From Octopus bimaculoides (Eukaryota), in assembly GCF_001194135.2 (NCBI RefSeq), contig NC_068989.1, positions 89,349,946 through 89,390,869 on the forward strand: a stretch of 40,924 bases of DNA. The letters are read 5' to 3'. The position numbers and the translations under genes were made by a program. Shown piece by piece: positions 1,033 to 26,822 of the stretch (positions within the stretch are counted from its first letter, which is position 1; every line of letters begins with the position of its first letter). Below the pieces are notes generated by a model. It was not told the origin of the DNA and did no database searches. It was given only the letters and a program-made list of their open reading frames with translations.

Positions 1033-1119
1033 GTAACATTTATTTGCTTTGCCTTTTTTGATTTTGAATTCATTTTATTTTTCTTGTTTATTGAAGATAT
1101 TTAGGTATTTATCAGTGTA

Positions 1120-1487
1120 CAGGCATGGCTGTATGGGAAGAAGCTTGCTTCTCAACCACATGGTTCCAGGTTCAGTCCCACTGCATGAGCAAGTGGATTT
1201 TACTATAGCCTTGGGTCAACCAAAGCCTTGTGAGAGGATTTGGTAGACAGAAACTGAAAGAAGCCTGTCATATATATATATATTTGTGTGTGTGTCTGCC
1301 ACCACTGCTTGATAACTGGGGGTGTTGGTGTGTTTATATCCCCGTAACTTAGCAAATGAGACTGATAGTATAAATACTGGTCTTTATAAAATGGTACTGG
1401 GGTTGATTCATTTGACTAAAATTTCTTAAAGGGTGTGCCCCACCATGGCCACGGTCTAATAACTAAAACAAGCAAAAAATAAAAGAT
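1120..1487 (+). mobile_element. tRNA-derived SINE, family with internal (TA)n/(TG)n
   Basis: GGTTCAGTCCCACTG B-box-like head, GCCTTGTGAG.GGATTTGGTAGAC.GAAACTG body and CATGGCC.CAGTC..ATGACT.AAACAAG tail. Confidence 0.75.
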
Positions 1488-2524: not shown

Positions 2525-2630
2525 CAAGGATCAAAAGTTTTCCTCGACCTTGCTTATTCTCCTCTGAACCAATTGATTATCACAGGATCTGCTGATCGAC
2601 ACATTCGTCTCTGGGACCATAGAACAAATG
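2525..2630 (+). CDS. WDR12: WDR12 exon (QGSKVFLDLAYSPLNQLIITGSADRHIRLWDHRTN)
   Basis: Acceptor ttatctttgcag, phase-1 donor G|GTTTGT. DRHIRLWD is the WDR12 motif. Confidence 0.95.
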
Positions 2631-3186
2631 GTTTGTGGCCTTTCCTTATCTCTCTATCTCTTTCTCTCTCTATCTCTCTCTCTCTCTCTCTCTCATATAT
2701 ATCATCATCATCATCATCATCGTTTAACATCCGCTTTCCATGCTAGCATGGGTTGGATGATTTGACTGAGGACTGGTGAAACTGGATGGCAACACCAGGC
2801 TCCAGTCTAAATATATATCAATGATTCACATTTATTTTGAAGTGAGTTGTGAACTGCAAAATGCAGGTGTGACATTTTTAGGATGTGTGATTTGGGTAGT
2901 AAAATGTGAAATGTAACATTTCTTTTAGGCTATAATAGTATGGATATTGTCTGTTGTAGAGTGGGAGATATGAGATATTTGATGTGGTCTGTGTGGACAG
3001 CAAAGATATATATGTATGTTCTTTCATTTGTTTTTTTTTTTTAATGTGTAAAACTCTCTCTTCGTATTTGATTGTGTGTGTAACTCTCAATCTAGTTATC
3101 TTCAAGTTCAACGGTGTGTGTGCAAAAGCACGATGATGTCATTTTCTGTTTACACGTGCCAATTTCTGTTATTTTCTTGTCTGCAG

Positions 3187-3319
3187 AGGGTGCAATAGTC
3201 AAGAACAGTTTCTCTTCCCATCGAGGGTGGGTGTCCAGTGTATGCTGGTCACCCAACAGTGAAAACCACTTCATCTCAGGTTCATATGACATGCTATTAA
3301 AACTGTGGGACGTACGAAG
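3187..3319 (+). CDS. WDR12: WDR12 exon (EGAIVKNSFSSHRGWVSSVCWSPNSENHFISGSYDMLLKLWDVR)
   Basis: Acceptor ttcttgtctgcag, phase-2 donor AG|GTGAGT. Phases agree with both neighbouring exons. Confidence 0.95.
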
Positions 3320-3524
3320 GTGAGTACAGAATGAATATATTGCTACAAAGCCCCATCCATTATTTTGGCACAAGTCCAGCAATTTTCGCATCATTATCCA
3401 TTAGCTTAGTTAATCTCCATACTTTATTCTTTAGGACAATTATGTAATGGAAATTAGGAACTTAAGACCCAGATATCTTTTATCGTTGTAAGGTTAATGT
3501 TCTTAATTAAAGGTGCTCTCAGTG

Positions 3525-3875
3525 GTTTCAGGCCTGGTTGTCTGGTTAATAAGAAGCTCACTTTACGACCATGTGGTTTCGGTTGCAAAGCCTTGTGCAG
3601 CATCTTGGACATTTGTCCTCTGCTATAAGCCCTGGGCCAATCAATGCCTTGTGAGGGAATTTAGATGACAGAAACTGTGTGGAGGCCTGTCATGTATAGA
3701 CATACATGTGTGTATCTCTGTGTTTGTTCCTGCTCCCCACTTAGAGGTTCAGCAAAAGAGACTGATTAAATACATACCAGACTTTAAAATAAGTACTGCA
3801 GTCAACCTGTTCAACTAAACCCTTGAAAATGGTTCCCTAGCATAGTTGCAATCCTGTGTGTGAAACAAATAAAAG
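3525..3875 (+). mobile_element. tRNA-derived SINE, same family as 1120
   Basis: Same head, body and tail motifs, more diverged. Confidence 0.65.
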
Positions 3876-4254
3876 ATATGGTGACCATCCCTGTCTATGA
3901 TGGATGCCAATAACTTACTGCTATACAGAAAGGTTAAAAAGCATGAATATTAGTTAGAACACCTCATTCTACTCCCAGTTTTTTCTTTCCTTTCTTATAA
4001 TTCAAACCTTTAACAATTTATTTAAACCAGCCACATCTGGCCCAAATATTCTGAGTTTATGTTCAAACTGGTCAGATCTGGCCTTTCACACCTACCTTAC
4101 AATGTCTTCTAAAAATAAACACTCGCATCATTGCAGTCTCAAAACAGTCTGAATAAATAAATATAACATTTGACAGAGTAATCTGAATGCTAAAGGTTGA
4201 AAGACTATTCTTGTATTGTTATTTATCTGTTTTATACATTTGTGTTTTTTCCAG

Positions 4255-4405
4255 TCCAAAAGCTCCACTGTATAACATGACAGGTCATGAGGAAAAGATT
4301 CTTGCAGTGGACTGGTCGATTCCTGAACTTATGTTATCTGGTGGTGCTGACAAACACATGAAGATATTTCACCACACTAATGCCAAAGAATTCATTGCTT
4401 CATAA
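4255..4405 (+). CDS. WDR12: WDR12 terminal coding exon (SPKAPLYNMTGHEEKILAVDWSIPELMLSGGADKHMKIFHHTNAKEFIAS*)
   Basis: Acceptor tttttccag. KAPLY..GHE.K...VDW...LSGGAD matches the WDR12 C-terminus. TAA stop. Confidence 0.95.
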
Positions 4406-7330: not shown

Positions 7331-7376
<46 letters not shown>

Positions 7377-12204: not shown

Positions 12205-12210
12205 TTTATT
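12205..12210 (-). terminator. AATAAA overlapping the ZNF106 stop codon
   Basis: Minus strand reads CAA TAA A, followed about 30 nt later by a T10 tract. Confidence 0.55.
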
Positions 12211-15200
12211 GTTTAAGGTGTCTGTCACAGTGTTTCATCAATAAAGATGAAGACTTAAATGTTTCTGAACAAAATACCCAATGGCATTGCCAATTATTCC
12301 ACTTAGCAATTTGTCCTTTCAAGTGTTCACTGTGCAAATGGAATCTCAAGTCTTCGTACAAACCAAATGTTAATGTGCACTTGTTATATCTACAGACCCA
12401 CCCTTTTGGTGAGGAATCACTGGGTATATCAAAAGCCTCAACAAGGCCATAAAAGTTCCCACTGTAGATTTTCCTATCAGACACAGTCAAACAGGAGATG
12501 CTTTGTTTGCCTGCACCGTAAAAAGAGAATGGCTTTATTTTGTCTAAGTCTGTGACTGATCCCCAATACACATTGATTAATTTATCATGACTACCAGTCA
12601 CAAGTATTTTATTGTCAACATAAAGACACGACACTGTGCCAGAATGACCCTGAATGCATCTCACAAGGTCTCCTGTTTCAATGTCAAAGACAGCCAGTTT
12701 CCTATCTTCTGAACAGCTGTATATCAAGTTTTGAGACACTTTGATTGAATAAAGTAGTCTTTGACAGGGCAGCAAGGTTTTCAAAAGAAGGCCTGATGAT
12801 GCAGAGACGATAAGAATTGAAGCATCATAAGCACCGATGCAAAGAATTTTGAGAGCCCCTTCAGTACAAGTGGCAAGACAATGAATTGGTTTAGTTCCGT
12901 ATGATATATTACTGATTTCCTTCAATGTCTTCAAGTTTATCTTAGACACACCACCATCAGCAAGGCCAATAAAAAGATAATTCCATTTTTCATGAAAAGT
13001 GTAAATTTTTCTCATGAGATCAATTTTTGTCAGCAACTGTCCAGTAATTTCATTAAATACAAGAAGCATTTCACTCGCACCACCAGAGAACACTCGTGGG
13101 TTTTCAAAAGAAAACCCAGTCACTAACATACATTGGACTGAAAATGGCTGACAGTTGTATTCTTTTACACAAATTGCAGTTCTAAGATCAAACTTCTGAG
13201 GTGAGTGTCCCTGATATGAAACATAGAGGTAATTCCCAAATATGGCACAATTTGTGACAGGATAATTGGGACCTTTGAAGACAGTATTAGGGGTGGACAC
13301 AAAATCAGAAAACTTTTCTTGACTTTTAGTTGAAAATTGATTTTGTAAAGTATCTGTGCTGGAACCTTCAGGTATAGTATTTAAGACTTGTCGAGGGGCT
13401 GTAGAAGATGGCAATTTATTTACAGTTTTATCAGCGCCATTATCTTCCGAACTGCTATCACCGTCAATTATAATTAGACTAATTGAAGAATCATCTGATG
13501 ATTGTTCATTTTTGGAAATGGTTTCCGAGAGTTTTGAGTTGCTCTTTGCAGTGTTTACATCTACACTTTCTATATATTTAGATCCTGAAGAATTTGAGGA
13601 TAAAGAGAGCGGCTTGATAGAAACTACAGGATTTAAACTGGCAGGCAGAACAAAGTTGTTGGCTTCATCAACATTTATAATGTAAGGAGAAGGTTTAGCA
13701 ATTTGTGATGGAGTTAAGTGGTTCTCAGTTCTCATAGAAGTTTCACACGTTGAAGTAAATGGAGGTAAACTGGAGACGTTTGCAACTGGCACCGTGTCAT
13801 CAGTTTGTCCCTGTGGGAAACATTTATTCATGGTAACATTCTGCTTCTTCCAACATTCTTTCAACTGTTCTACCAAATTATTAGACATGCTCCCTAAATA
13901 TTTCATCGACACATTACCTGAACATTTTTCAGGATCCACATTCTCAATACAAGACGAGTCTAATAAGTTTTTCATTGAAAGTGATGAAAAGAATTCTAAT
14001 TCTTCATCTGATTTCTCTTTGTCATTGTGGTTAGCAGGAACTGAATTCGGTTTCGCTGAATGGTTTGAGGTTGTGGTAGACTGTAATGATGTAGCACTCT
14101 GCTGAACACAAGTAGTGGTGGCCACTTCAAGAACTGGTGAAGTTACTGGCAAATTACTTTCTGACTTGCTGGCATTAACTAACCTATTTTCAGAAGAGAC
14201 TGGATTATCAGTATTAGAACCAACTTCTCCAACACTGCTTTCTGGAAACAAATGAGGTTGACCCTTTTCAAAGCAGTTCACTTTCTGTTGGTTATCAATG
14301 TGGGAAAAAGCTGATGAGGAATCTTGGTTAAGTTCACCCAAACCAAATCCACCAAAGTCTGTTGGTGATTTTGGTTCTTCTTTAATGCTTACAAAGTTAA
14401 AGCCTGAATCAGAAACTGGTGGATTAGTTTCAATGGCTTCTGGAGAGATTGGCTCTGTTTTGATTTGAACATTGTCAAATGTGGAGGTCACTGGAAGTGT
14501 TGTTGGCTCAACAGAAGCCTCGGATTCACAATTTCCATCATTTTCCTTCTTCACAGAAGTTAAACTATGGCTGATTTCTGACACTTTTTTAGACAAGTCC
14601 GTTATGTTTGCTTGCATGTCAACAGAATCTGATGCATTATTATTGTCAGAGTTGGTAATTTTCGATGATGATGATGATGATGACACAGAAGACGGAGCTT
14701 TGAAATTAATGTGTTGTTGTGGAGGGAAAGAAAAATGTAGAGATTTTGAAGAGTTTAAGGTATTCTTTTCTTTTGTTGACAGTAATGGGTCCTCCTGGTT
14801 GAACTGGAAAATACTACCCTTCAGCCCTTTTTTCCCAGAAGAAGTGTTATTTGGAACATCTGGTGGTTGCAAGGTATTGATCCCTTCTTGTGAACTTTCC
14901 TGTAGCTTTAGCATATCTGAAAAGTGCTTTTGATTTTTAAACACAGAATCTTTTAATGTTTTGGGCAGTTTCAGACCTTTGGTGACATCTTTTATTAATA
15001 AAAGATTTGCCATATATTTGTTTTGTGAGTTTGATTGGTGAAGTGTCTCTTGTGTGACCGAACCTGGTTGTTGGAGTCGGGTCCCTTGTGCTGGACAATT
15101 CATCTGGAGTTTGTTGAACACTGACTCAGTTTGCTTTCCTTTTGCTAACAGAGCAGCCAGTGTGGGTTGTTTTTGTTGGGCTGTGGTTAGGATGCCAGTA

Positions 15201-18200
15201 TTTTCTGACACAACAGCAGGTCTACATGTTTCTTGTGCCGTTGTACCATCTTGTTGCATACCAAATGGCTGTTCATTACATGATTCTGGTGGTACTGGGA
15301 TGTTTTGGTGTGTTCCCTCAGAAGCCAAGTGAGATCTCAACAAGTGATTAATTAATTCACTGTTACTGCGATTAGTGTCTCCCATGGCTTCCTTGAGAAT
15401 GCCTATGCGCATTTTTCGTATGTTTTGCTCTTCTTCCATGAGGCCCAGCTGTTCATCTTTACAGGCTTGCAGAGCAATCTTTGAATCTTCAATTAATTTC
15501 TCCAAGTAAGAGATTCTTTGATTTAAATTACTGATGTTACCACACACCTCTTCCTCTCGTAAAGTTAACAAATAGACCTGGTTGAAAACATCAGATGTCT
15601 GGCTGTTTGGTTCCACTGTGTTCTCCACTGCAACATTCTGGTCGACTATTTTGGATGAGTTACTTGCAGCAGTAGTAGTAGATGTAGTGGTAGTTATTGT
15701 TGAAATAGCAGTATTGGTTGTTGTAGTAGGGGTACAGATGGTAGCACAACTTGATGGAGGTGCCTGCCGTGCATTTTTCGACAGAGATTTCTTTGTGCTT
15801 TTTTTGTTTCCTGCTGAAACTGAGGACTTTGTACTTGCAGAACTCAAGTTTGATTGATCAAGATCGAATAAAGGTTGTAAAGGATCTGACACTGTGGTTG
15901 GTACGAGATTCATCTGTATATTTGCTTGACTAGTTTTTGTCATTAACTGGTCTGAATTGGAAAATGTCTCTGTATTTCCTAATTCATCCATGTTCTCTTT
16001 CTTAATCAACATTGTTATTTGTTCCTCTAAGCCCTCAGGTAAGTTCAACTTTTCACTGTTTTCCTTTTGGTTGGTACTGTTATAGATACTAGACAGCTGC
16101 ATGGTCAATCTTGGTACTGCTGACCTCTTGTTTTGAGTCTTTGTGTAGGACTTCATTACAGAGCTTAAATGCATTTTTTCCTTATGGTTCAAGCAAGAAA
16201 GTTTGGTCATTTTCACCAGTTCTTCCTTACCGACATTTTTACTAAGCTGTTGTTTCTCAACAGTTGTTGAGTCGAGCTTTGCTGGAGTTATTTCTTCTGA
16301 ATGATTTGAACGTTCTTGTAAACTGGAAACAGTTGAGTAATTACTCGCAGTTTCAACCTTTTTCCTTGAATTTTTTGCAGCATCTGGATTCAAGTTTTGA
16401 TTTTTCTCAGAAATGCTCATTTCCTTGCTTGTAGAACATTTTAGTTTTTTCAAGAGATTAGGTTTCCCCGAACCTGCAAGATATTCAGAAGAAAGGGTCC
16501 TTTTCCTTGCCACACCACTAACTGCAGTTTCACTCAAAGAACCAGTTGGTTTACAAGTTGTAATGTCTATGCTACTTGAAGAAGAATTTGGCTTCGTTTC
16601 AATTGATTTTGTTGTTTTGGAGTCAGGCTCCTTAGAGTCAGCTGACTTGATTATCAGTCCACTGTTTTCAGAACTTTGAGACAAAGAATTACAAATTTCT
16701 AAGTTTTTACTATTTTTGGTAGCTTCCACAATAACACAGGGTATCTTGGGTGAATTATTACTATTTTCAGAAGTTTCCACAGCATCACTGGGTACATTAG
16801 GTGAGTATTTACTATTTTGGGGTGTCTGCACAACATCACTAACTACACTGGGTGAATTGTTACTGTTTTTGGTTGTTTCCACAGCTTCACTGGGTATAGA
16901 GGGTGAATTGTGACTATCTTTGGACGTTTCCCTAGTATCACTGGGAACAGAGGGTGAACGTAATAAGTTTTCACTCTGCACTTTGACAGTTTTATCCCTT
17001 GATTCTGTTTCCATTTGAGAAACACAAAAGCTGTTTTGATTAAGCGCTTTCGACTTATTATCCTGGTCGTCTTTAACCGCTTCTAATGGCTTGGTGACCT
17101 TTGAAGGAACGGCTTTTAAAACAGATTCAGGTTGTGCTTTGGAGGGAACTTTCAGGGGTGATAATTGTAGAGGTTTTGAATGTTTTTTTGTGGTGTTTGA
17201 TGTTTTTAAAGATCTGTTTTTAGTTGTGAGCTTAGATGATCTGAAGTCTTTAGTTTGGACACGTGACAAAGAGGAATGTTGAGAACTATTATTATTGTCT
17301 TTCATGAACCCTGCTGTCAGTTTATTTGTAAATACTTTATCTCCTTTGTCAGTTGTGGCATTAATCAAATTCAACCTGACAATGTCTAAGTTATTTTTCT
17401 GAAAATCCTCCTCTAAAAACAGTCCTTGTCTAAAGCCAGAAGGGGTTGTAACGACCATTTTTTTCTTAGATCTTGGGGCTAACACACTTCTGGACAAACT
17501 CTGTTTGCTGTCTTTCACCAATCCCTTTTTAGCAGGAAGCCGATTGGCTGACAAGCTTTGGTCATTTGTGGATGAACTGCTTGGGACATCTACTTTATCT
17601 TTCTTAATTTTCTTTTTCTTCATCATGGCATTTTTTTTGCCAACAGAAACCTCATTTTGTTTTACTGGATGAACTTTTAAAAATTTCTGGTCACCACCAT
17701 GAACCACAGAATTGTTCTCATTACAATTCAAACTGATTCTTTCCTCACTAAAATGGACACCAGCTCTCATGGGATTCCCTCTTCCATATTGGTCACCATG
17801 GCCTATCCCTGGCGGATACCTTTGATGCGGCTGACCACCATGAACCATAGAATTGTTCTCATTACAATTAAAACTTCTTTCCTCACTAAAATGGACACCA
17901 GCTCTCATGGGATTCCCTCTTACATATTGGTCACCATGATACGGCTGACCACCATACCTTTGATACGGCTGACCACTATGATCCATAGAATTGTTCTCAT
18001 TACAATTAAAACTTCTTTCCTCACTGAAATGGACACCAGCTCTCATGGGATTCCCTTTCACATATTGGTCACCACTGCCTGTCCCTGGCGGATACCTTTG
18101 ATACGGCTGTGGCAAATGTTTACGACTGTTTAAAGGAGAGATGTAAGGTTTCAAGTGGGAAAAAGGGTAACTTAAATGCCAACTCTTGTTTGGCATCAGA

Positions 18201-18505
18201 AAAGGTGGAACAGGTGTCTTCAGGGACAATAGAGAGCAAGGTTTTGTACTCTCAGATATTTTCTTCTCTCGTAATTTTGTCAATGCTTTTTTGTGCTTCA
18301 GTTCATTCAAATGTTGGCCATATTGAACTAAATTATTCGAGGAAGCCTGGCACAGACAACACACGTGTTCTGGGGGTTTTTCTTTCTGCTCCAATCTCAC
18401 ATGATGCATCAAGGACCAAAGATGCTCCCGCAGCTCCGGTTGACTTGCATAGGACAGCTTGCAAACCTCACAATGGAATGTGGAGGCCTTTGCTGCGTCA
18501 CTCAT
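12206..18505 (-). CDS. ZNF106: Zinc finger protein 106 orthologue, 2099 aa, intronless CDS
   Basis: N-terminal fingers (CEVC..EHLWSLMHH; CCLC..HLNELKH), an LTLREEE coiled coil (~15390-15590), WD40 repeats (~12420-13290, including LATCTEGALKILCIGAYD and GLLLKTL) and two C-terminal C2H2 fingers. Order and motifs match vertebrate ZNF106 as recalled. An in-frame TGA lies upstream of the ATG and a 3' splice site (tttctcaccag) 33 nt upstream. Confidence 0.9.
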   Translation of the reverse strand: MSDAAKASTFHCEVCKLSYASQPELREHLWSLMHHVRLEQKEKPPEHVCCLCQASSNNLVQYGQHLNELKHKKALTKLREKKISESTKPCSLLSLKTPVPPFLMPNKSWHLSYPFSHLKPYISPLNSRKHLPQPYQRYPPGTGSGDQYVKGNPMRAGVHFSEERSFNCNENNSMDHSGQPYQRYGGQPYHGDQYVRGNPMRAGVHFSEERSFNCNENNSMVHGGQPHQRYPPGIGHGDQYGRGNPMRAGVHFSEERISLNCNENNSVVHGGDQKFLKVHPVKQNEVSVGKKNAMMKKKKIKKDKVDVPSSSSTNDQSLSANRLPAKKGLVKDSKQSLSRSVLAPRSKKKMVVTTPSGFRQGLFLEEDFQKNNLDIVRLNLINATTDKGDKVFTNKLTAGFMKDNNNSSQHSSLSRVQTKDFRSSKLTTKNRSLKTSNTTKKHSKPLQLSPLKVPSKAQPESVLKAVPSKVTKPLEAVKDDQDNKSKALNQNSFCVSQMETESRDKTVKVQSENLLRSPSVPSDTRETSKDSHNSPSIPSEAVETTKNSNNSPSVVSDVVQTPQNSKYSPNVPSDAVETSENSNNSPKIPCVIVEATKNSKNLEICNSLSQSSENSGLIIKSADSKEPDSKTTKSIETKPNSSSSSIDITTCKPTGSLSETAVSGVARKRTLSSEYLAGSGKPNLLKKLKCSTSKEMSISEKNQNLNPDAAKNSRKKVETASNYSTVSSLQERSNHSEEITPAKLDSTTVEKQQLSKNVGKEELVKMTKLSCLNHKEKMHLSSVMKSYTKTQNKRSAVPRLTMQLSSIYNSTNQKENSEKLNLPEGLEEQITMLIKKENMDELGNTETFSNSDQLMTKTSQANIQMNLVPTTVSDPLQPLFDLDQSNLSSASTKSSVSAGNKKSTKKSLSKNARQAPPSSCATICTPTTTTNTAISTITTTTSTTTAASNSSKIVDQNVAVENTVEPNSQTSDVFNQVYLLTLREEEVCGNISNLNQRISYLEKLIEDSKIALQACKDEQLGLMEEEQNIRKMRIGILKEAMGDTNRSNSELINHLLRSHLASEGTHQNIPVPPESCNEQPFGMQQDGTTAQETCRPAVVSENTGILTTAQQKQPTLAALLAKGKQTESVFNKLQMNCPAQGTRLQQPGSVTQETLHQSNSQNKYMANLLLIKDVTKGLKLPKTLKDSVFKNQKHFSDMLKLQESSQEGINTLQPPDVPNNTSSGKKGLKGSIFQFNQEDPLLSTKEKNTLNSSKSLHFSFPPQQHINFKAPSSVSSSSSSSKITNSDNNNASDSVDMQANITDLSKKVSEISHSLTSVKKENDGNCESEASVEPTTLPVTSTFDNVQIKTEPISPEAIETNPPVSDSGFNFVSIKEEPKSPTDFGGFGLGELNQDSSSAFSHIDNQQKVNCFEKGQPHLFPESSVGEVGSNTDNPVSSENRLVNASKSESNLPVTSPVLEVATTTCVQQSATSLQSTTTSNHSAKPNSVPANHNDKEKSDEELEFFSSLSMKNLLDSSCIENVDPEKCSGNVSMKYLGSMSNNLVEQLKECWKKQNVTMNKCFPQGQTDDTVPVANVSSLPPFTSTCETSMRTENHLTPSQIAKPSPYIINVDEANNFVLPASLNPVVSIKPLSLSSNSSGSKYIESVDVNTAKSNSKLSETISKNEQSSDDSSISLIIIDGDSSSEDNGADKTVNKLPSSTAPRQVLNTIPEGSSTDTLQNQFSTKSQEKFSDFVSTPNTVFKGPNYPVTNCAIFGNYLYVSYQGHSPQKFDLRTAICVKEYNCQPFSVQCMLVTGFSFENPRVFSGGASEMLLVFNEITGQLLTKIDLMRKIYTFHEKWNYLFIGLADGGVSKINLKTLKEISNISYGTKPIHCLATCTEGALKILCIGAYDASILIVSASSGLLLKTLLPCQRLLYSIKVSQNLIYSCSEDRKLAVFDIETGDLVRCIQGHSGTVSCLYVDNKILVTGSHDKLINVYWGSVTDLDKIKPFSFYGAGKQSISCLTVSDRKIYSGNFYGLVEAFDIPSDSSPKGWVCRYNKCTLTFGLYEDLRFHLHSEHLKGQIAKWNNWQCHWVFCSETFKSSSLLMKHCDRHLKQ
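16703..16957 (-). repeat. Coding tandem repeat in ZNF106, 5 x 51 bp (17 aa, SP-initiated)
   Basis: SPSVPSDTRETSKDSHN / SPSIPSEAVETTKNSNN / SPSVVSDVVQTPQNSKY / SPNVPSDAVETSENSNN / SPKIPCVIVEATKNSKN. Confidence 0.9.
17692..18109 (-). repeat. Coding tandem repeat in ZNF106, 3 x 138 bp (46 aa)
   Basis: Units start at 18109, 17971 and 17833. Consensus QPYQRY...GDQY..GNPMRAGVHFSEER.FNCNENNS..HGG. Confidence 0.95.
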
Positions 18506-18707
18506 GTTTCTTCTTACAATGGGTTCACATCAGATTTCCTGGTGAGAAAGAAAAATATAGGTTTAAATACAAGTGTTATGTATATGTATGAGTATATATA
18601 AATATATGAATGTATATAGGCATATATATGTACACACATAAATATATACGTGTATGTATGTGTATATATGTATGAGTGTGATTATATATATATATAAAAA
18701 GGCAGTG

Positions 18708-18910
18708 AGTTAATAGAAGCATTAGCATGCTGGATGAAATGGTTGGTGGTATTTTACCGTTGCTACGTTCTGAGTTGAATTTCTGCTGAGGTTGACTTTG
18801 CTTTCATCCTTTCAGGGTCAATAAATAAGTACCAGTTAAAAACTGGGGGTTGATGTAATCGACTAGTCCCCTCCCCACAAATCTGAGGCTTTGTGCCTCC
18901 AGTAGAAAGG
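18708..18910 (+). mobile_element. SINE, Meta-like family
   Basis: Same core sequence as the copies at 122-600. Confidence 0.75.
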
Positions 18911-19319
18911 ATATATATATATACATATATATATATACACACACACACACACATACATATATATATACACACACACATATATACACATATACAGACACAC
19001 ACATATATACACACACACATACACATATACATATATATACCCACCCAATAGGGTGCATCTTATACACTGGCCAATATAGTATATGCTAATAGATATGTGT
19101 GTATGTATGCATGTATGTNNNNNNNNNNACACACATATATACACATATACAGACACACACATATATACACACACACATACACATATACATATATATACCC
19201 ACCCAATAGGGTGCATCTTATACACTGGCCAATATAGTATATGCTAATAGATATGTGTGTATGTATGCATGTATGTTAGTGTGTGTGTATACTTTTACTT
19301 GTGTCAGTCATATATGTAT

Positions 19320-19950
19320 ATCATCATCATTGTTTAACGTTCGCTTTCCATGCTGGCATGGGTTGAACGTTTCCACTGAGGTCTGGGCAGCCAGAAGACT
19401 GCACCAGGCTCCAATCTGATCTGGCAGAGCTGGATGCCCTTCCTAACACCAACCACTCCAAGATTGTAATGGGTGCTTTTTACGTGCCACCAGCACAGGA
19501 GTCAGTAAGGCAGGCCATATATAATACATAATCATTATCATCATCATTCTTTAATGTGCTTTTTCCATGCTGGCGTGGGTTGGACAGTTTGGCCAGAGCT
19601 GGAGAGCTGCACCAAGTTCTGGTCTGATTTGGCTTGGCTTCTCTGTCTGGATGCCCTTCCTAATGCCAACCACATTGCAGTGTATGCTGGGTGCTTTTAA
19701 TGTGGCATGGCAGGAGTGCTTCTACATGACACTGGCACAAGTGCCTTTTTATATGGTACCTACACTGTGCTCCTGCCGGCTAATCCTCTTTAACAGGGGG
19801 AGTGGCCTTAACACTTCCACTGGGGATGACGGGTCTTCTTGAGTACAGCAAGGAACCAGGTATCTTGGCCCTTTGTCATCTTGTCTGAGAGGTTCTGGTG
19901 CCACATAAAAAGCACCCAGTTGGCATTAGGAAGGGCAACCATGCCAACAC
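19320..19950 (-). mobile_element. Copies of a (TGA)n-tailed retroposon 3' end, one piece inverted
   Basis: On +: (CAT)n-TTTAACG..TTTCCATGCTGGCATGGGTTGGA..GATGCCCTTCCTAA..CCAACC. Other copies at ~2700-2810, 20288-20500, 20675-20805 and 24105-24300. An inverted piece lies at ~19895-19945. Confidence 0.7.
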
Positions 19951-20804
19951 ATAGACAATGGAACTTTGTGTGAATCTTGGCTATATATATATGAGTATAT
20001 ATACTGGCATACAACAAGCTTCTTTCAGTTCTTGTGCACCAAATCCACACACAATAACTTTGGTTGCTCAGGATTGTGGTAGAAGACATTTGCTCTTGCC
20101 CAAAATGCCATGCAGTAGGACTAAGATGACATGGGTAGAGAAGCAGGCTTTCCAACCACACAGCCACACCTACACCAATGCGACTAAGGAACTGGGTAAG
20201 GCAGGATATGACAGTAGAATGTGAACCAGGGTGGGAATAAGACAGAATGGTCAGGTAAAAGTATGGAGGGGGTAAGTAATGAAAGGGCATCATCATCATC
20301 ATTATCATTTGTTTGCTTTTCATCCTGGCATGGGTTGGATGGTTTGACAGAAGCCGGCAAACTGGAGTGCTGCACCAGGGTCTGTGTTGGTATGTTTTCT
20401 ATGGCTGGATGCCCTTCCTAATGCCAACCACTTTATAGAATACATTGGGTGTTTTTTATGTGGCACCAACAGCAGCACAGGTACTAATTATGTGGCACTG
20501 GCACTATGTATTTAATAGGAGTGATGAAGAGTGTGTGAGACAGAGAGAGCAAGTGGAGGACATTCATAGAAATGGTAAGTGGAAAGTGCTTGACAGATAG
20601 CAATAATAACTTGAGAAAGAAAGAAAGAAAAAGAAAGAAAGAAAGAATATTGCTAATTGTTGACTAAACATAAATCATCATCATTTAATGACTGTTTTCC
20701 ATGCTGGTATGGGTTGGACAGTTTTACAAGAGCCATACCAGGTTCCATTGCCTGTTTCAGCAGCTGGATACCCTTCATAACACCAACCACTTTATAGGGT
20801 GTAA

Positions 20805-21135
20805 GGCACCATCACCTGTGCCTTTTACGTGACACCATCACCAGTGTTTTTTAGGTGACACTAGCACCAGTACCTTTTAGGTGGCACCATCACCAGTGCC
20901 CTTTAGGTGGCACCATCACCAGTGCCTTGTAGGTGGCACCATCACCCGTGCCTTTTAGGTGGCACCATCACCCGTGCCTTTTAGGTGGCACCATCACCAG
21001 TGGCTTTTAGGTGACACCATCACCTGTGCCTTTTACGCGACACCATCACCAGTGCCGTTTACGTGGCACCATCACTCGTGCCTTTTATGTGGCACCATCA
21101 CCAGTGCTTTTCAAGTGGCTCCAGCACCAACAGCG
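20805..21135. repeat. Minisatellite, about 12.5 x 26 bp (GGCACCATCACCAGTGCCTTTTAGGT)
   Basis: Head-to-tail units with point variants and no spacers. Confidence 0.95.
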
Positions 21136-21579
21136 TCATCAAGTCCCTTGCACAACTTGTAATTGAATAGTATAATTAATTATTGCATAATTAATAATTA
21201 CAATAATTAATTCTGACATTCCCTGTTTATCCATTCAACAATAAGATTTATGTTCTTATATTATTATATTTATATGGCTTAAAATTGCAAGCAAATATAA
21301 TTTCATAATTATATAATTAATTGCATAATCAATAATTATATAATTGGTAATTACAATAATTAATAATTGCATGAGTGGCTGTGTGGTTAAGAAACCTGCT
21401 CCCTAACCACATGGGGTTAGAATAAGTACTGAGCTTAAAAATCTAGGGTTCATTTGTTTGACTAAACACTTCAAGGCTGTACTCCAGCTTGGCCACAGTC
21501 CAGTGACTGAAACAAGTGAAAAATATTGGATAACAGAAAAGATAATTAATTCTTACATTTCATGATTTATGTCTCACCT

Positions 21580-22380
21580 AAATGAATTATCCAATAAGAT
21601 TTATATCATCATCATTCTTATATCAATTATATATCACTAAAACTGCACAGTCATGTATAATAATCGTGTTAAATCATGATAACATTTCCACCCAAGGGTG
21701 GTGCTGGACATCCTGCAAGCATCTGATTGATGGCAACATTGGTCAATATCTTCGCCTTTATCAATATTCCAAGAAATTTCCAGATATTTCCATAGAACGA
21801 AAATAATACTAGGCTTACATGTGGTTATGCCATCCTACCAAGGAGTTAATGGTGCAGAATAAACTACATGATTATACATATTCCACAGCTTATAGAGAAA
21901 ACATGGAGCTTGCATGTTACATCAACACATTCTGTCAATAAGTGTGGCTTTGAAGCCGTCTATAACAGGATCAGTTTCAGGCAACACAGTCTCTTGAAGA
22001 TTTTCAAATGTATGTCACTTTATCTAATTTAATGACAACATATTAGTTTTCAGGGCAAACTCAATATCATTTCAATATTTTCTTTGCAATCCCTCACACT
22101 GCAGCTTGTGGTGTATTGCTATGAGTGTTAGTAACTTTTCTTCTTGATTTCCTGCTGTACAAAGAGGACTTCTGGGTGAAGTACGTCGGCAGCATGAGTA
22201 CAATCATTTTCATAACTTACTGTTTCATTTCCACAAACTTTAACTTAGGTTTCACATTTGCCATGTTGCTGGTTCTGACATTCATATGATACAACTCTAT
22301 TTGCCAATTCTTTCTGCTTCACATCTTTGTATCAATCACAAGTAGGCTTCATTTTACTACATTTGCTTTGCATTAACTCC
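21580..22380 (-). mobile_element. Degraded MULE (Mutator-like) transposase remnant
   Basis: Manual translation across stops and frameshifts gives a FLYWCH-like segment (YECQNQQHGKC..CTHAADV, ~22170-22290) and C-terminal MULE-type motifs LWNMYNH, GWHNH (21821-21838) and IWKFLGIL...QMLAGCPAPP. The DDE core was not seen. Confidence 0.6.
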
Positions 22381-22474
22381 AGGACTGAATCACAAAAATT
22401 ATGGCATACTTACAGAGTTATAGTTGTACTATTTGTAGTTCAAGTATATTGTGATATATTGAGAGACTTGGTGA

Positions 22475-22808
22475 AAGCGCATGGCTCAGTGGTTAGAGCG
22501 TCGAGCTTACGATCATGAGGTTGTAAGTTCGAATCCCAGACTAGGCTGCGTGTTGTGTTCTTGAGCAAGGTACATTATTTCACGTTGCTCCAGTTCACTC
22601 AGCTGTAGAAATGAGTTGCGACGTCACAGGTGCCAAGCTGTATCAGCCCCTTTGCCTTTCCCTTGGATAACATCGGTGGCGTGGAGAGGGGAGGCTGGTA
22701 TGCATGGGCAACTGCTGGTCTTCCATAAACAACCTTGCCCGGACTTGTGCCTGGGAGGGTAACTCTCTAGGTGCAATCCCAGGGTCAGTCATGACCGAAG
22801 GGGGTCTC
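22475..22808 (+). mobile_element. tRNA-derived SINE, third family, intact Pol III boxes
   Basis: A-box TGGCTCAGTGGTTAGAGCG and B-box GTTCGAATCCC, continuing into a non-tRNA body. Confidence 0.8.
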
Positions 22809-23404
22809 AGCATATTAGAGACTTGGAGATGGATTCTTAGTAGTCCAAGCACTGACTCCAGATTGGTCATTGTTATTCCCCCAAACCTGTAAATTTGGCC
22901 ATAAGTCAAGTCAAAAATTTCTCCAAACTAATAACTTAAAATGACCAGAATAGGTTTGGTCAACCATTGCTAACAGCCAAACAGGCAGGTTTCAGCAGCT
23001 CAGTTCAATGGGTAAGGTCAGATCTAAGGTCAACAGATAACAATTACAGGGTAGAGTAAGGTAAATCTCACAGGTCAAACCAAAATTAAAGATAAGAAGG
23101 AGTCTATTGATGAAGCAAAATGATATCACTTTTAGTGGTATAATTATAATAGTGTTTTAAGAATATAAATCTTATTATTGGATAACAGATGAAACATAAA
23201 ATATAATAATTAATTACTGCATTAGTATGTACACGAAAATGAAACTTTAATTAGTGTTATTAATATTTAATTTCACCCCTATATTTATGTTGATTCGTTA
23301 ACCCAGTCTTTTTATTCTATAACCAATATTTTACTCTTGTCTCAATTATTCTGAGCACTTCTCCTTGCAGCCCTGTATAAAATCTATTGGTTTCCTAATA
23401 AGAA

Positions 23405-23415
23405 ACCATTAATAT

Positions 23416-23447
<32 letters not shown>

Positions 23448-23463
23448 CATATATGTATATATA

Positions 23464-23511
<48 letters not shown>

Positions 23512-23521
23512 TGTATATATA

Positions 23522-23569
<48 letters not shown>

Positions 23570-23570
23570 T
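23405..23570. repeat. Compound (TA)n/(TG)n microsatellite with a higher-order unit of about 58 bp
   Basis: Direct reading. Other simple repeats at 7321-7375, 18910-19280, 26823-26882, 35516-35540, 38252-38282 and 40830-40924. Confidence 0.9.
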
Positions 23571-23574
23571 TTAT

Positions 23575-23764
23575 TTACTCTTTTACTTGTTTCAGTCATT
23601 TGACTGCGGCCATGCTGGAGCACCGCCTTAAGTCGAGCAAATCGACTCCAGGACTTATTCTTTGGATGCCTAGTACTCATTCTATCGGCCTCTTTTGCCG
23701 AACTGCTAAGTTACGGGGACCTAAACACACCAGCATCGGTTGTCAAGCGATGTTGGGGGAACAA

Positions 23765-23799
<35 letters not shown>

Positions 23800-24057
23800 C
23801 GACAGGCTTCTTTCAGTTTCCGACCAAATCCACTCACAAGGCTTTGGTCGGCCCGAGGCTATAGTAGAAGACACTTGCCCAAGGTGCCACGCAGTGGAAC
23901 TGAACCCGGAACCATGTGGTTGGTAAGCAAGCTACTTTACCACATATATATATAGGTGCAGGAGTGGTTGTGTGGTAAATAATTTGCCTACCAACCACAT
24001 GGTTCTGGGTTCAGTCTCACTGCATGACACCTTGGGCAAGTGTCTTCTACTATAGCC
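23575..24057. mobile_element. Head-to-head SINE pair (full - copy 23575-23945, partial + copy 23955-24057)
   Basis: Arms 23857-23944 and 23971-24057 are reverse complements with about 90% identity by eye. Confidence 0.85.
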
Positions 24058-24552
24058 TAGCATATTTATGCATACACACACACATACACATATATATACT
24101 ATGTATCATCATCATCATTTAACGTCAGTTTTCCATGCTGGCATGTGTTAGACGGTTCGACAGGAGCTGATAAGACTGAGAACTGCCCCAGGCTCCATTG
24201 TCAATTTTGGCAGGTTTGTATGGCTTGATGCCCTTCCTAACGCCAACCGCTTTAAAGAGTGTACTGGGTGCTTTTATGTGGCACCGACACTGACAGAGTC
24301 TCCAAGCAACACGGCTGTGAGTGAGGAGTAGTATTGAGTGGTGGTAGTTTTGTACCAGTTGAGAGATTAAAAGGTAAAGAGGGACAAGGATAGGTGCCTT
24401 AATCTGGAACCTCCTTTCCATGCAAAGTGGTAAACAATAATTCTAACTTTCCTGATGTTCATAAAACAGGTTGTGAGACAAAAACGATCTTCGGTGAATG
24501 TTTCTTTCTCTCTCATTTTTTTTTTATAATGGATGTGTGCAGACAACCTTAC

Positions 24553-24599
24553 CAGAACTGGGGTCACGAATTCGTGAGCAACTTTGAATATTCATTCTA
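24553..24599 (-). other. Candidate ZNF106 non-coding 5' exon 2
   Basis: Minus strand: long pyrimidine tract ending ttgtttttgtaTAG TAG (tandem acceptor), 44-47 nt exon, donor CTG|GTAAGG. Inferred from splice signals only. Confidence 0.5.
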
Positions 24600-25849
24600 C
24601 TATACAAAAACAAAGAGCAATAAAGACGTTACTTTAAAAAAGAAAAAGCGCTACACCATTCATACGCGTTCGAGCCTGAGCATCAACAGCTACGAAACGA
24701 AACTATAGACGCATTAGTCACTGAGCAAAGTTAGGTGGTTCCCCTCGAAATTCGTCAATAACTTACAATCAGCTGAAACACATGGTCATATGTGTTGAGT
24801 GAAGTAACAGACAAGCCTTCCTCAAATCAAATCCCACTCTCATAAAATGGAAATAATCGCACCAGCACGAAAAGAAGGACGTGAAACGAACAAACATAAG
24901 ATAGTAGTAGTTTTAGACCTACATCGTGTCTGAATAAAGGACGGGATAGCTGCAGCTGGAATGCATTTGACCACAGGTATGTTCGAACAGGGCTGACATG
25001 GGGCCAAATAACAACTATAGTTCTTAGCGGCATTTCTTTATTTCTTTTTATAATTCTGTGTATTGATATTTTCTTTTAATATCTATATAATCTAACCACA
25101 AGCCATCACAGCTCTCTCTTTCTTTCACGCAGTCTATGAAACGTCCTAGCAAAGTTAATGTTTATCATCGCATGTCATGTACATCCGATCAAGCAACTTC
25201 AATTTAATAAGGCTGCGATTGATTTTAAAACAGGAATTATCAATCCAATAGTTACATCTCTTAACGATCCTCTACTGTATTAAGGATTCCTGCTCAAAGA
25301 CAGCCCCTGTTTAGCATAAACTACTATTAAAGACACCCTTGTCACGAACCATTCAGTCTTTTATTAATACATAATATATCTAGAACTATATTATCCAATG
25401 TCTACTTCCTTGAGGGGTTGGGGGGTGGAAGAAGATAGGACACAATTGCTATTTCTAGCATATCCAGCGACAGCAGCGTGGCACTGTCGTAGGTTTGGAC
25501 GAAAACACATGAATTCACTAATAATAAACTGTATGGATGTCACTTTTACTAATCGTGTGTGAAATATTTACCTAAATCTTTACAACTCTACCAATGTATA
25601 AACAGACACTTCCATCTGTCCAGTTGATAGGAAACTAGGGAAAACCACATCGAAATCGAGTCCCACTTTAAGTATTGTCACAAGCGACACGTTATCACGT
25701 TTTCCCTTAAATTTCCAATATAAGATGGGGAATAAAATGCTAATGCTATTGATTATTATGGACATTCTTAGTGGATTTAGTTTTTCCATAGACACAAAAA
25801 AATATGCACATTTAAAAAGAAATTAGATATATTTCTCTGGAAAACTCAC

Positions 25850-25905
25850 CAACTTTCAGAATACATCGTGGGTCAAACCGGAAGAAATACTAAGGGAGAT
25901 AACTC
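25850..25905 (-). promoter_or_regulatory. Candidate ZNF106 promoter and first exon
   Basis: ETS-type ACCGGAAG at 25877-25884, donor TTG|GTGAGT at 25850/25849, and locally raised CpG content nearby (26160-26260). Confidence 0.4.
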
Positions 25906-26822
25906 CAAGTAACACATTTTCATTTCCACTTTTTCATTCGTTTTTATTTCAAATATTCAAATGTTTTTGGTTGCTCTCATTAAATTCCATTTACAAATTT
26001 TCATTGCGATTGTTTTCCTTCTTTTCTAAAGATCCTACAAGAAATGCAAAAATAAACATATTCTCTCTCCCTCTGTCTGACTGTGATCGAGGTTTATATA
26101 TAATTGAGTTTGAGTATAGATATTTCTCCAGTTTTTTTTTTTTAAATACATATATGTGAGTATTTATGTACACGTACGCGCACGATCGGATGAACTCGCG
26201 CTATTTCGAAGTGGCATCGGTTTTCCTTTCCAGATATCTAACTCCAAACGAAGCGTAATATAAATTAGGTTTATGTGAAGCTTTAGAGTTGGTTTTAACG
26301 TTCCGATTACTTTTTTTTCTTCTCGCAGAGGTGTCAAGAAAAGTTAAAATGAAGTTAGATCTTGCCTGTGGCACAATAATTCGAGTTGCTCCTTCACTCC
26401 GTTTTCTTCCATGTTACGTTGAAAAATCAACACGAACTGAATATTTACATTTGAATAGTTTCCTTTTTACTGCATGGAATTTACCAATCCTTATTGTTTA
26501 TTCCTCAAGAGTTGTTACTGCTATTTAGTCACAGGTCTACTCTTATTAAACAGTCTTATGATAAAAGACATTCCAGCCATGATCCCATCTCTTTCCTTTC
26601 CAGGACAACATTATCCTGTGTCCTATTTCAAAATACAGTTGGGTATGATTTGTGGGAGATTTGACTGCTATTTCTAACAACTCGAATGACAGCACAGATT
26701 TCCCTCGTTTCATATAGGATGATTTGATTAGTTCAAAGTCCATGGCCAAAGGAATTCCAGTTGTAACCATTTCTCCATTTATTTTTAAAGTTGGTATTCT
26801 TCTTCTTATCCTTATTTTATTG

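What the first reader, a model, noticed from the sequence alone, without database searches (positions are those of the whole stretch)
12206..18538. ZNF106 encoded as one 6.3-kb intronless coding exon, a possible retrogene that recruited new 5' exons
Seen: a 2099-codon ORF with no intron from the N-terminal fingers through the WD40 propeller and C-terminal fingers. The only intron evidence is a 3' splice site 33 nt upstream of the ATG, and neighbouring WDR12 has normal small exons. Established: vertebrate ZNF106 is a multi-exon RNA-binding protein gene, and cDNA-mediated copying removes introns. Several WD40 GH dipeptides are degenerate here (GP, CQ), which suggests accelerated divergence. Inference: the locus arose by retroposition or whole-CDS cDNA recombination and either replaced or coexists with an intron-containing parent.
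Basis: partly seen in the sequence, partly recalled or inferred. Interest (0 to 1): 0.7.

Follow-up and report, generated by a model that had tools for sequence, protein, structure and literature searches.

The report
Intronless ZNF106 gene shared by coleoid cephalopods
The octopus version of the RNA-binding protein gene ZNF106 really is encoded by one 6.3-kb uninterrupted exon, but squid-like cephalopods share this state, so it is an ancient, functional, cDNA-derived gene of a known kind and not a recent octopus oddity.

Summary
Window 12206-18505 (minus strand) is one 2099-codon ORF. It encodes two N-terminal C2H2 fingers, a 7-bladed WD40 propeller and two C-terminal fingers, which is the ZNF106 architecture. 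A strong acceptor lies 33 nt upstream of the ATG.

The intronless state is derived. Clam, abalone, oyster and fish orthologues have 17-21 coding exons. At least 11 intron positions and phases are shared between molluscs and fish. All are absent here.

It is not octopus-specific. Genomic DNA of Argonauta, the cuttlefish Acanthosepion pharaonis and an unnamed decapodiform carries the same uninterrupted CDS. WDR12 lies convergent downstream in three of the four genomes. The event therefore predates the octopod-decapodiform split.

The gene is under purifying selection (dN/dS 0.1-0.3). I saw no second copy. The "degenerate GH" motifs are partly shared with clam and abalone.

Octopods have a conserved non-coding exon 1 about 7.3 kb upstream. 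Its promoter motif is also present in decapodiforms.

Best reading: cDNA-mediated erasure of at least 16 introns in the coleoid stem. The more likely route is retroposition followed by loss of the parent gene. In-situ cDNA recombination is a close rival. This is a new example of a known phenomenon and of moderate interest.

The parts
12206..18505 (-). Complete CDS of the ZNF106 orthologue: 2099 codons plus a TAA stop (12208-12206), with no intron.
   Evidence: ORF list and translation. The N- and C-terminal domains align to fish ZNF106 and to the mollusc orthologues.
18293..18472 (-). Two N-terminal C2H2 fingers (aa 12-35 and 49-71). In clam, abalone and fish this region is split by two introns (phase 0 and phase 2) that are absent here.
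   Evidence: Regex for the finger pattern. Intron positions mapped on the alignment.
12428..13285 (-). Seven-bladed WD40 propeller (aa ~1741-2026). The outgroups have 7-8 phase-0 introns in this region; none is present here.
   Evidence: Pfam and PDB WD40 matches. AlphaFold2 model with 28 strands, pLDDT 88 and pTM 0.85. Intron map.
12218..12394 (-). Two C-terminal fingers (aa 2038-2061 and 2074-2096). The second has the C-x-W-x2-C (CWCH2) form. The first has Y in place of W.
   Evidence: Regex, alignment, beta-beta-alpha elements in the model. The CWCH2 definition is taken from PMC4706115.
18506..18538 (-). 33-nt 5' UTR segment at the start of the large exon, directly after the acceptor AG (18540-18539).
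   Evidence: Sequence. The acceptor and the following AAATCTGAT are conserved in Argonauta. PWM score in the top 0.8% of AGs.
18539..25849 (-). Inferred intron 1, lying within the 5' UTR (7311 nt). It is rich in microsatellites and SINE-like repeats and contains a 10-N gap at 19119-19128.
   Evidence: The donor G|GTGAGT at 25850/25849 and the acceptor at 18539/18538 are both conserved in Argonauta, where the intron is ~2.6 kb. Splicing them reproduces the N-terminus MYSESWKSDVNP of O. vulgaris model CAI9727769.1.
25850..25906 (-). Non-coding exon 1 and core promoter; the 5' limit is unknown. It holds the motif GGAGTTATCTCCC (25894-25906) and an ETS-like CTTCCGG (25878-25884).
   Evidence: 76% identity block with Argonauta. 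The motif is conserved in all four coleoid genomes. It occurs once exactly in the window, against 0.05 matches expected.
17693..18109 (-). In-frame 138-nt x3 tandem repeat inside the CDS (46-aa unit). O. sinensis and O. vulgaris have one unit.
   Evidence: TRF. The isoform alignment shows a 92-aa gap in those species.
16707..16958 (-). In-frame 51-nt x4.9 tandem repeat (17-aa Ser/Pro-rich unit). Copy number varies among Octopus models.
   Evidence: TRF and isoform alignment.
865..4405 (+). Context: the last four coding exons of WDR12, convergent with the ZNF106 gene (approximately 865-1056, 2507-2632, 3156-3326, 4220-4405).
   Evidence: tblastx against the Argonauta locus. PDB hit to human WDR12 with E=3e-64. 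The same arrangement is seen in Argonauta and in decapodiform L005.

Best explanation
This is the only detectable ZNF106 orthologue of an Octopus species. ZNF106 is an RNA-binding protein with N-terminal fingers, a WD40 propeller and C-terminal fingers.

In the stem lineage of coleoid cephalopods a reverse-transcribed, fully spliced ZNF106 mRNA gave rise to a gene copy lacking all (at least 16) ancestral coding introns. The route I consider most likely is retroposition into a site next to WDR12, with later loss of the intron-containing parent. This outcome is called 'retrogene replacement' or an 'orphan retrogene'.

The copy is driven by a promoter marked by a GGAGTTAYCTCCC...CTTCCGG motif that all sampled coleoids share. 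In octopods the leader between that promoter and the ATG became a spliced 5'-UTR intron: 7.3 kb in this window and 2.6 kb in Argonauta.

Shown: intron absence in four genomes, ancestral introns in four outgroups, purifying selection, and conserved exon-1 donor and acceptor sites.

Inferred: the cDNA intermediate, the relocation, the loss of the parent, and the order of events in the leader.
For: (1) The CDS is uninterrupted in four independent genome assemblies: the window, Argonauta hians L001, Acanthosepion pharaonis L007 as a single tblastn HSP at 8462-14542, and decapodiform HiFi contig L005.

(2) The outgroups are multi-exon. Ruditapes has 17 coding exons, Haliotis 18, Saccostrea 18 and a catfish 21. 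Clam and abalone share the same phase series 0,2,2,0,1,0,1,2,0,0.... Eleven intron positions fall in the same alignment column and phase in mollusc and fish. The introns are therefore ancestral.

(3) At most of those positions the cephalopod sequences align without indels. That indicates precise excision, as expected from a spliced template.

(4) WDR12 next door keeps small exons, so this is gene-specific and not genome-wide intron loss.

(5) WDR12 is the convergent 3' neighbour in Octopus, Argonauta and L005. In Ruditapes the 3' neighbour is a MutL-like gene and in Haliotis an F-box/FBA gene; Saccostrea shows only a cystatin gene upstream.

(6) The structure 'non-coding exon 1 + 5'-UTR intron + single coding exon' is the usual form of matured retrogenes, and orphan retrogenes are documented (PMC4772013, PMC3548309 and PMC5803294). 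Intronless retro-paralogues that arose early in cephalopods have been reported for SP6-9 (PMC7661307).

(7) In decapodiforms the promoter motif sits ~600 nt from the ATG and there is no acceptor at the octopod position. This fits an originally unspliced retrocopy leader.

(8) dN/dS is 0.26 overall between two cuttlefish, 0.00 in the N-terminal finger region and 0.095 in the C-terminal region. The gene is functional.
Against: No poly(A) remnant or target-site duplication could be found, and the 3' flanks barely align between species. After an estimated >250 My that is expected, but it leaves retroposition without direct hallmarks.

Relocation is not demonstrated. The three mollusc outgroups also differ from each other in their neighbours, and only 10 kb or less of flank was available.

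All four outgroup genes have a good acceptor-like site 3-48 nt upstream of their ATG, in the top 1.4-4.5% of AGs. Octopods have the same arrangement. This would be expected if an ancestral 5'-UTR intron had been retained in situ.

Absence of a parent copy rests on annotated proteomes and capped hit lists, not on a whole-genome search. Nautilus was not sampled.
Confidence: 0.5

Rival explanations
1. In-situ retroprocessing. A reverse-transcribed ZNF106 cDNA that was incomplete at its 5' end recombined with, or gene-converted, the native locus in the coleoid stem. It erased every intron downstream of the start-codon region. The native promoter and the ancestral 5'-UTR intron were left in place. 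Decapodiforms later remodelled that leader.
For: Octopus and Argonauta keep an intron ending 33 and 17 nt upstream of the ATG. Ruditapes, Haliotis, Saccostrea and the fish each have a pyrimidine tract plus AG 3-48 nt upstream of their ATG, scoring within the range of their own true acceptors.

Sparing of the 5'-most intron and simultaneous loss of adjacent introns are the classic signatures of the cDNA-recombination model (PMC2614967 and PMC3296678).

The gene is single-copy in the searches run, so no parent loss has to be assumed.
Against: Erasing at least 16 introns over 6.3 kb in one gene is far beyond the usual 1-4 adjacent introns.

The outgroup acceptors are predictions only, because no UTR annotation or RNA data was available.

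The cuttlefish has no good acceptor near its ATG, and the promoter-to-ATG distance is ~600 nt in both decapodiforms. That is not a precise intron loss.

The coleoid promoter motif was not found in the 10 kb upstream of the clam or abalone genes. None of the three mollusc outgroups shows WDR12 nearby.
Confidence: 0.3
2. Stepwise loss. The introns were removed one or a few at a time over a long stem lineage, by several cDNA recombination events or by genomic deletions, and not in one event.
For: The stem leading to coleoids is long, and no intermediate taxon such as Nautilus was sampled. A gradual series therefore cannot be excluded with the data in hand.
Against: All four coleoid genomes show the identical end state, with zero coding introns. 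Removal is indel-free at most testable sites, which genomic deletions rarely achieve. The neighbouring WDR12 shows no tendency towards intron loss.
Confidence: 0.08
3. The ORF is not truly a single coding exon. Parts of it are spliced out of mature mRNA as internal introns or 'exitrons', as the several O. sinensis isoforms might suggest.
For: NCBI lists O. sinensis isoforms X1-X4 of 2058, 2048, 2047 and 2041 aa. O. vulgaris has a 1743-aa isoform.
Against: The O. sinensis isoforms differ only by in-frame 10-, 11- and 17-aa gaps in low-complexity or tandem-repeat sequence. The same gaps occur as fixed differences in this window's genome and in O. vulgaris. They therefore look like indel polymorphism between the RNA donors and the reference genome, not 30-51-nt introns.

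The reading frame is kept open over ~2000 codons in four genomes, and dN/dS is 0.28-0.38 even in the disordered middle region.
Confidence: 0.07
4. The intronless state is ancestral, and the other lineages gained their introns.
For: None found.
Against: Eleven intron positions with identical phase are shared between molluscs and a vertebrate. Independent gains at the same sites are implausible.
Confidence: 0.01

Closest known systems
Vertebrate ZNF106 / mouse Zfp106 (RNA-binding zinc-finger WD40 protein)
   Same: The domain order is the same: two N-terminal C2H2 fingers, a long disordered middle, seven WD40 repeats and two C-terminal fingers (PMC4706115). Fish ZNF106 is the best non-mollusc hit at both ends of the protein.
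   Different: The vertebrate gene has about 21 coding exons and this one has a single coding exon. Identity is only 27-33% in the domains. The first C-terminal finger has Y where the CWCH2 motif has W. The middle region is unalignable and carries lineage-specific tandem repeats.
Retrogene replacement / 'orphan' retrogenes, e.g. amphioxus SYCP1 (PMC5803294) and human orphan retrogenes (PMC3548309)
   Same: A multi-exon ancestral gene is represented by a single-coding-exon copy. No parent is detectable, the state is conserved across a clade, the gene is under purifying selection, and a non-coding 5' exon/promoter lies upstream.
   Different: Relocation relative to the ancestral locus is not demonstrated here. 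The CDS is about twice as long as AmphiSYCP1 (6.3 kb against 3.2 kb). The event is older, being shared by octopods and decapodiforms.
Reverse-transcriptase-mediated intron loss by cDNA recombination (PMC2614967, PMC3296678)
   Same: Precise, simultaneous loss of adjacent introns. Possible sparing of the 5'-most (UTR) intron.
   Different: The scale is much larger: at least 16 introns, covering the whole CDS. Documented metazoan cases usually involve one or a few introns.
Cephalopod intronless SP6-9b/c paralogues (PMC7661307)
   Same: Intronless genes shared by cephalopods and attributed to retrotransposition early in the lineage.
   Different: Those are extra paralogues that sit beside an intron-containing SP6-9a. 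Here the intronless gene appears to be the only copy.

Membership tests
ZNF106/ZFP106 orthologue group | Two N-terminal C2H2 zinc fingers | tested here: met
   aa 12-35 and 49-71 match C-x2-C-x12-H-x5/6-H. They align to fish ZNF106 aa 7-71 and to clam aa 11-83.
ZNF106/ZFP106 orthologue group | Seven WD40 repeats forming a C-terminal propeller | tested here: met
   Pfam WD40 and beta-propeller hits. PDB WD40 hits. The AlphaFold2 model has 28 strands, i.e. seven four-stranded blades, with pLDDT 88.
ZNF106/ZFP106 orthologue group | Two C-terminal CWCH2-type fingers after the propeller | tested here: met
   aa 2038-2061 (C-R-Y-N-K-C, with Y in place of W) and aa 2074-2096 (C-H-W-V-F-C). Both are aligned with the fish fingers and modelled as beta-beta-alpha. 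The first finger departs from the strict CWCH2 motif at one residue.
ZNF106/ZFP106 orthologue group | Closest relatives outside the clade are ZNF106 proteins, not other WD40 proteins | tested here: met
   Fish ZNF106 scores E=3e-44 and 2e-41; the next hit is a bacterial WD40 protein at 7.5e-8. A profile search returns ZNF106-type proteins with one full-length C-terminal match. Those I looked up were named ZNF106-like in abalone, clams, an oyster, a nemertean and amphioxus.
ZNF106/ZFP106 orthologue group | RNA binding (G-quadruplex / GGGGCC repeats) and nuclear function | not testable with these tools
   Known for mouse Zfp106 (PMC11295049 and PMC5283830, listed). No experimental data exist for cephalopods.
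Retrogene (retroposed gene copy) | Lacks the introns of the parental gene, with precise removal | tested here: met
   There are no coding introns, against 16-20 in four outgroups. Eleven conserved positions are absent, most without indels.
Retrogene (retroposed gene copy) | Lies at a locus unrelated to the parental locus | tested here: inconclusive
   WDR12 is the neighbour in three coleoid genomes. Clam, abalone and oyster have other neighbours. The outgroups also differ from each other, and flanks were 10 kb or less.
Retrogene (retroposed gene copy) | Poly(A) tract remnant and flanking target-site duplications | tested here: inconclusive
   No conserved A-tract and no alignable 3' flank between species. 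Decay is expected given the age of the event.
Orphan retrogene / retrogene replacement | Parental intron-containing copy absent from the genome | tested here: inconclusive
   Only one cluster per species was found among annotated O. sinensis, O. vulgaris and Argonauta proteins. No whole-genome tBLASTn was possible.
Orphan retrogene / retrogene replacement | Copy is functional (selective constraint) | tested here: met
   dN/dS between Sepia sp. and A. pharaonis is 0.26 overall, 0.00 for the N-terminal fingers and 0.095 for the propeller plus fingers. For Octopus against Argonauta the C-terminal value is 0.18.

The most novel reading that the evidence does not exclude
The intron erasure happened in place. 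One long but 5'-incomplete cDNA converted the native ZNF106 locus in the coleoid ancestor, deleting at least 16 introns over 6.3 kb at once while sparing the ancestral promoter and 5'-UTR intron. That would be an unusually large, cleanly datable animal example of the reverse-transcriptase recombination model of intron loss. It would also be a rare genomic change that marks Coleoidea, or Cephalopoda if Nautilus shares it.
Probability: 0.3. Interest if true: 0.5.

Novelty: new member of a known kind. Interest (0 to 1): 0.35.

Why it matters
The locus is a clean, datable case of a large gene (17-18 coding exons) collapsing into one 6.3-kb coding exon and then persisting as what appears to be the only copy across a major animal clade.

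It is a discrete character for cephalopod phylogeny, because Nautilus and Vampyroteuthis can be scored as intron-containing or intronless.

It could be a test case for two questions: how a cDNA-derived gene acquires or keeps a promoter, and how a 5'-UTR intron is gained or retained.

It is also a practical caution for annotation. The Argonauta product carries a bromodomain-protein name. The A. pharaonis model starts at an internal Met. The O. sinensis 'isoforms' look like indel variants.

It does not reveal a new mechanism.

Tried and rejected
- **Retroposition hallmarks.** I looked for a poly(A) remnant and for conserved 3'-flank boundaries between species. Nothing was alignable beyond ~20 nt after the stop codon.
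- **Promoter motif in outgroups.** I searched the clam and abalone loci for GGAGTTAYCTCCC. No match was found in the upstream flanks.
- **Shared neighbours.** tblastx between the cephalopod and Ruditapes flanks found only the gene itself. WDR12 is not within 10 kb downstream in the cuttlefish.
- **Identity of contigs.** I tried to identify the samples behind ERZ21867824, SRR29271456 and SRR27666062 from the literature and found no hits. The taxon was instead inferred from identity to A. pharaonis, 83% in the C-terminal region.
- **Logan contigs as transcript evidence.** I tried to use cuttlefish Logan contigs (L006, L010-L015) to define the decapodiform 5' UTR. They are colinear with the genome, but their library type (DNA or RNA) is unknown. 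L010-L015 extend 530 nt beyond the promoter motif, so they do not define a transcription start.
- **Upstream region of the window.** ORFs in 18.6-40.9 kb are microsatellite or TE-derived. The block at 39.4-40.0 kb is a degraded non-LTR retrotransposon, not a neighbouring gene.
- **Lineus longissimus locus.** It was not on record.
- **Rejected ideas.** Cross-contamination by cDNA in the assembly is rejected because four independent assemblies agree. Ancestral intronlessness is rejected. Accelerated post-copy divergence is rejected.

Full report
**1. The observation**

The window holds one very long ORF at 12206..18505 on the minus strand, 2099 codons from an ATG. The next longest ORF is 171 aa. 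In DNA with ~38% G+C, an open frame of this length cannot arise by chance; that is my inference.

Upstream of the ATG the sequence reads tttttctttctcaccag|GAAATC...(33 nt)...ATG. A position weight matrix (PWM) built from 70 verified acceptors of ZNF106 orthologues puts this AG in the top 0.8% of all AGs in the window.

The neighbour at 865-4405 on the + strand is WDR12. Four small terminal exons match human WDR12 residues 249-414 at E=3e-64.

**2. Identity of the protein**

- C2H2 patterns lie at aa 12-35 and 49-71. C-x4-C fingers lie at aa 2038-2061 and 2074-2096.
- WD40 matches cover aa ~1780-2017.
- An AlphaFold2 model of the last 365 residues gives 28 strands, i.e. seven blades, followed by two beta-beta-alpha fingers (pLDDT 88, pTM 0.85).
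- This is the published ZFP106 architecture: two N-terminal C2H2 fingers, seven WD40 repeats and two C-terminal CWCH2 fingers (PMC4706115).
- Both ends align to fish ZNF106: aa 12-75 to fish 7-71, and aa 1743-2099 to fish 1332-1678.
- Fish ZNF106 proteins are by far the best non-mollusc hits.
- A full HMMER profile search returns ZNF106-type proteins. Those I looked up were from abalone, clams, an oyster, a nemertean, amphioxus and a coral.
- The source is an Octopus species that is neither O. sinensis nor O. vulgaris, to which the protein is 85% identical.

**3. The intronless state is derived**

I fetched the genomic loci of orthologues and solved their exon chains exactly.

| Species | Coding exons |
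|---|---|
| Ruditapes philippinarum (clam) | 17 |
| Haliotis asinina (abalone, gene spans 58 kb) | 18 |
| Saccostrea cucullata (oyster) | 18 |
| Trichomycterus (catfish) | 21 |

Clam and abalone share the phase series 0,2,2,0,1,0,1,2,0,0,0,0,0,0,0,0. On the alignment, two introns in the N-terminal fingers and nine phase-0 introns in the propeller and C-terminal fingers fall in the same column and phase in mollusc and fish. The ancestral mollusc gene therefore had at least 16 coding introns, many of them bilaterian in age.

None is present here. At most of these sites the cephalopod sequence aligns without indels, which is the mark of a spliced template and not of genomic deletion.

**4. It is not octopus-specific**

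- Argonauta hians: the gene range is exactly 2005 codons plus the stop, and it translates directly.
- Acanthosepion (Sepia) pharaonis genome: a cuttlefish protein (P0198, whose 90% cluster contains CAE1311915.1) aligns as one 2029-aa HSP at L007 8462-14542. The NCBI model merely starts at an internal Met.
- A 771-kb HiFi-style contig in ENA (L005): it has a 2070-codon uninterrupted ORF. The gene caller read through its TGA stop.
- The L005 C-terminal region is 83% identical to the cuttlefish and 51% to octopus, so it comes from another decapodiform.
- WDR12 is the convergent downstream neighbour in Octopus, Argonauta and L005.

The single-exon CDS therefore predates the octopod-decapodiform split. 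Nautilus could not be sampled.

**5. Function and constraint**

| Comparison | Region | dN/dS |
|---|---|---|
| Two cuttlefish (dS = 0.10) | whole CDS | 0.26 |
| Two cuttlefish | N-terminal fingers | 0.00 |
| Two cuttlefish | disordered middle | 0.32 |
| Two cuttlefish | propeller + C-terminal fingers | 0.095 |
| Octopus vs Argonauta | C-terminal region | 0.18 |

The 'degenerate GH' argument for acceleration fails for three reasons. GP and C-x-P occur at the same positions in clam and abalone. Cephalopods are as far from fish (27-30% identity) as clam and abalone are (28-32%). The propeller models as intact.

**6. The 5' end**

A 76%-identical block shared with Argonauta lies 7.3 kb upstream. 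It ends in a conserved AAGTTG|GTGAGT donor; the last exon base is 25850.

Joining that donor to the acceptor at 18538 produces the reading MYSESWKSDVNP. That is exactly the N-terminus of the O. vulgaris model CAI9727769.1. This gives annotation-level support for the junction.

The block carries the motif GGAGTTAYCTCCC...TTT(A)CTTCCGG, which is also conserved ~600-650 nt upstream of the ATG in both decapodiform genomes. The promoter is therefore common to coleoids.

The octopod acceptor is not present in decapodiforms. Whether their leader is spliced is unknown. The Logan contigs are colinear with the genome, but their library type is unknown.

**7. Mechanism**

A cDNA intermediate is strongly indicated. 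I put its combined probability at about 0.85-0.9. Two routes compete.

*(a) Retroposition next to WDR12, then loss of the parent.* Evidence in favour:
- The loss is complete, which is the classical retrogene signature.
- The structure 'non-coding exon + UTR intron + one coding exon' is the usual matured retrogene form (PMC4772013, PMC3548309 and PMC5803294).
- There is a cephalopod precedent in SP6-9b/c (PMC7661307).
- The neighbours differ in three mollusc outgroups.
- The decapodiform leader looks unspliced at the octopod acceptor site.

*(b) In-situ conversion by a 5'-incomplete cDNA.* Evidence in favour:
- All four outgroup genes have a good acceptor-like site 3-48 nt before their ATG, in the top 1.4-4.5% of AGs.
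- This mirrors octopods, as if an ancestral 5'-UTR intron had been spared. That is the expected 3'-biased pattern of the model (PMC2614967 and PMC3296678).

I weigh these as 0.5 for retroposition and 0.3 for in-situ conversion. Neither is demonstrated, because hallmarks such as poly(A) tracts and target-site duplications are not recoverable.

**8. Isoforms**

The O. sinensis isoforms X1-X4 differ by 10-, 11- and 17-aa in-frame gaps in low-complexity or repeat sequence. The same gaps appear as fixed differences in this window and in O. vulgaris. I read them as indel variation, not splicing.

**9. Verdict**

This is a real feature, correctly spotted. It is a functional ZNF106 orthologue that is cDNA-derived and appears to be single-copy. 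Its intronless CDS is ancient and shared by all sampled coleoids.

It is a new example of a known evolutionary phenomenon. No paper in the searchable library links ZNF106 with cephalopods. Interest is moderate.

Noticed in passing
window 17693-18109 and 16707-16958 (minus-strand CDS): Two in-frame tandem repeats lie inside the CDS: 138 nt x3 (46-aa unit) and 51 nt x4.9 (17-aa Ser/Pro-rich unit). Copy number differs between Octopus species: O. sinensis and O. vulgaris lack two 46-aa units. The 17-aa unit also varies among the O. sinensis 'isoforms'.
   Followed up: partly
window 18971-19276 (also 280-289 and 8949-8958): There are three 10-N scaffold gaps. The gap at 19119-19128 is flanked by a 148-bp duplication that is 100% identical (18971-19118 = 19129-19276). 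This is probably an unmerged contig overlap inside intron 1, ~600 nt upstream of the acceptor.
   Followed up: partly
window 25864-25866 joined across the intron to 18506-18538: The spliced leader would carry a 13-codon upstream ORF, MYSESWKSDVNPL*, ending 8 nt before the main ATG. The upstream ATG is not conserved in Argonauta. An O. vulgaris gene model uses it as its start codon.
   Followed up: partly
window 25878-25906; L001 7344-7375; L007 7856-7885; L005 9345-9375: A promoter-like element is conserved in all four coleoid genomes: GGAGTTAYCTCCC(Y)TAG...TTT(A)CTTCCGG, i.e. a partial palindrome plus an ETS-type site. Its binding factor is unknown.
   Followed up: partly
window ~39400-40000, minus strand: A degraded C-terminal ORF of a non-LTR retrotransposon (…CRACG…ECPKLAQEEYKKWRHDQV…RPDITIIDKEK…), with in-frame stops. 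A weakly similar copy sits upstream of the Argonauta gene (L001 2484-2798).
   Followed up: partly
window 7172-7509, 9126-9441, 23576-23944, 18715-18881 and others: Dispersed SINE-like repeat families fill the intergenic space and intron 1. One family is also present in several copies in the Argonauta locus (L001 ~5326-5879 and 8941-9098).
   Followed up: no
L002, L008 and L009 at 10001; L004 at 3001 (outgroup start codons): Clam, abalone, oyster and fish ZNF106 genes each have a pyrimidine tract plus AG 3-48 nt upstream of the annotated ATG. The scores fall within the range of their own true acceptors. This suggests that a 5'-UTR intron just before the start codon is ancestral.
   Followed up: partly
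L007 8462-10000; L005 16211-16213; L001 (product name): Three annotation problems in public records. The A. pharaonis model CAE1311915.1 starts at an internal Met, 513 codons into the ORF. The ENA gene call on L005 reads through the TGA stop. The Argonauta product is named 'bromodomain-containing protein DDB_G0270170-like', probably because of low-complexity similarity.
   Followed up: yes
(proteins P0101, P0121, P0006): In the propeller and C-terminal finger region, fish ZNF106 is closer to amphioxus (53%) and even to a coral (42%) than to any mollusc (27-33%). The fast evolution is therefore a feature of molluscs in general, not of cephalopods alone.
   Followed up: partly
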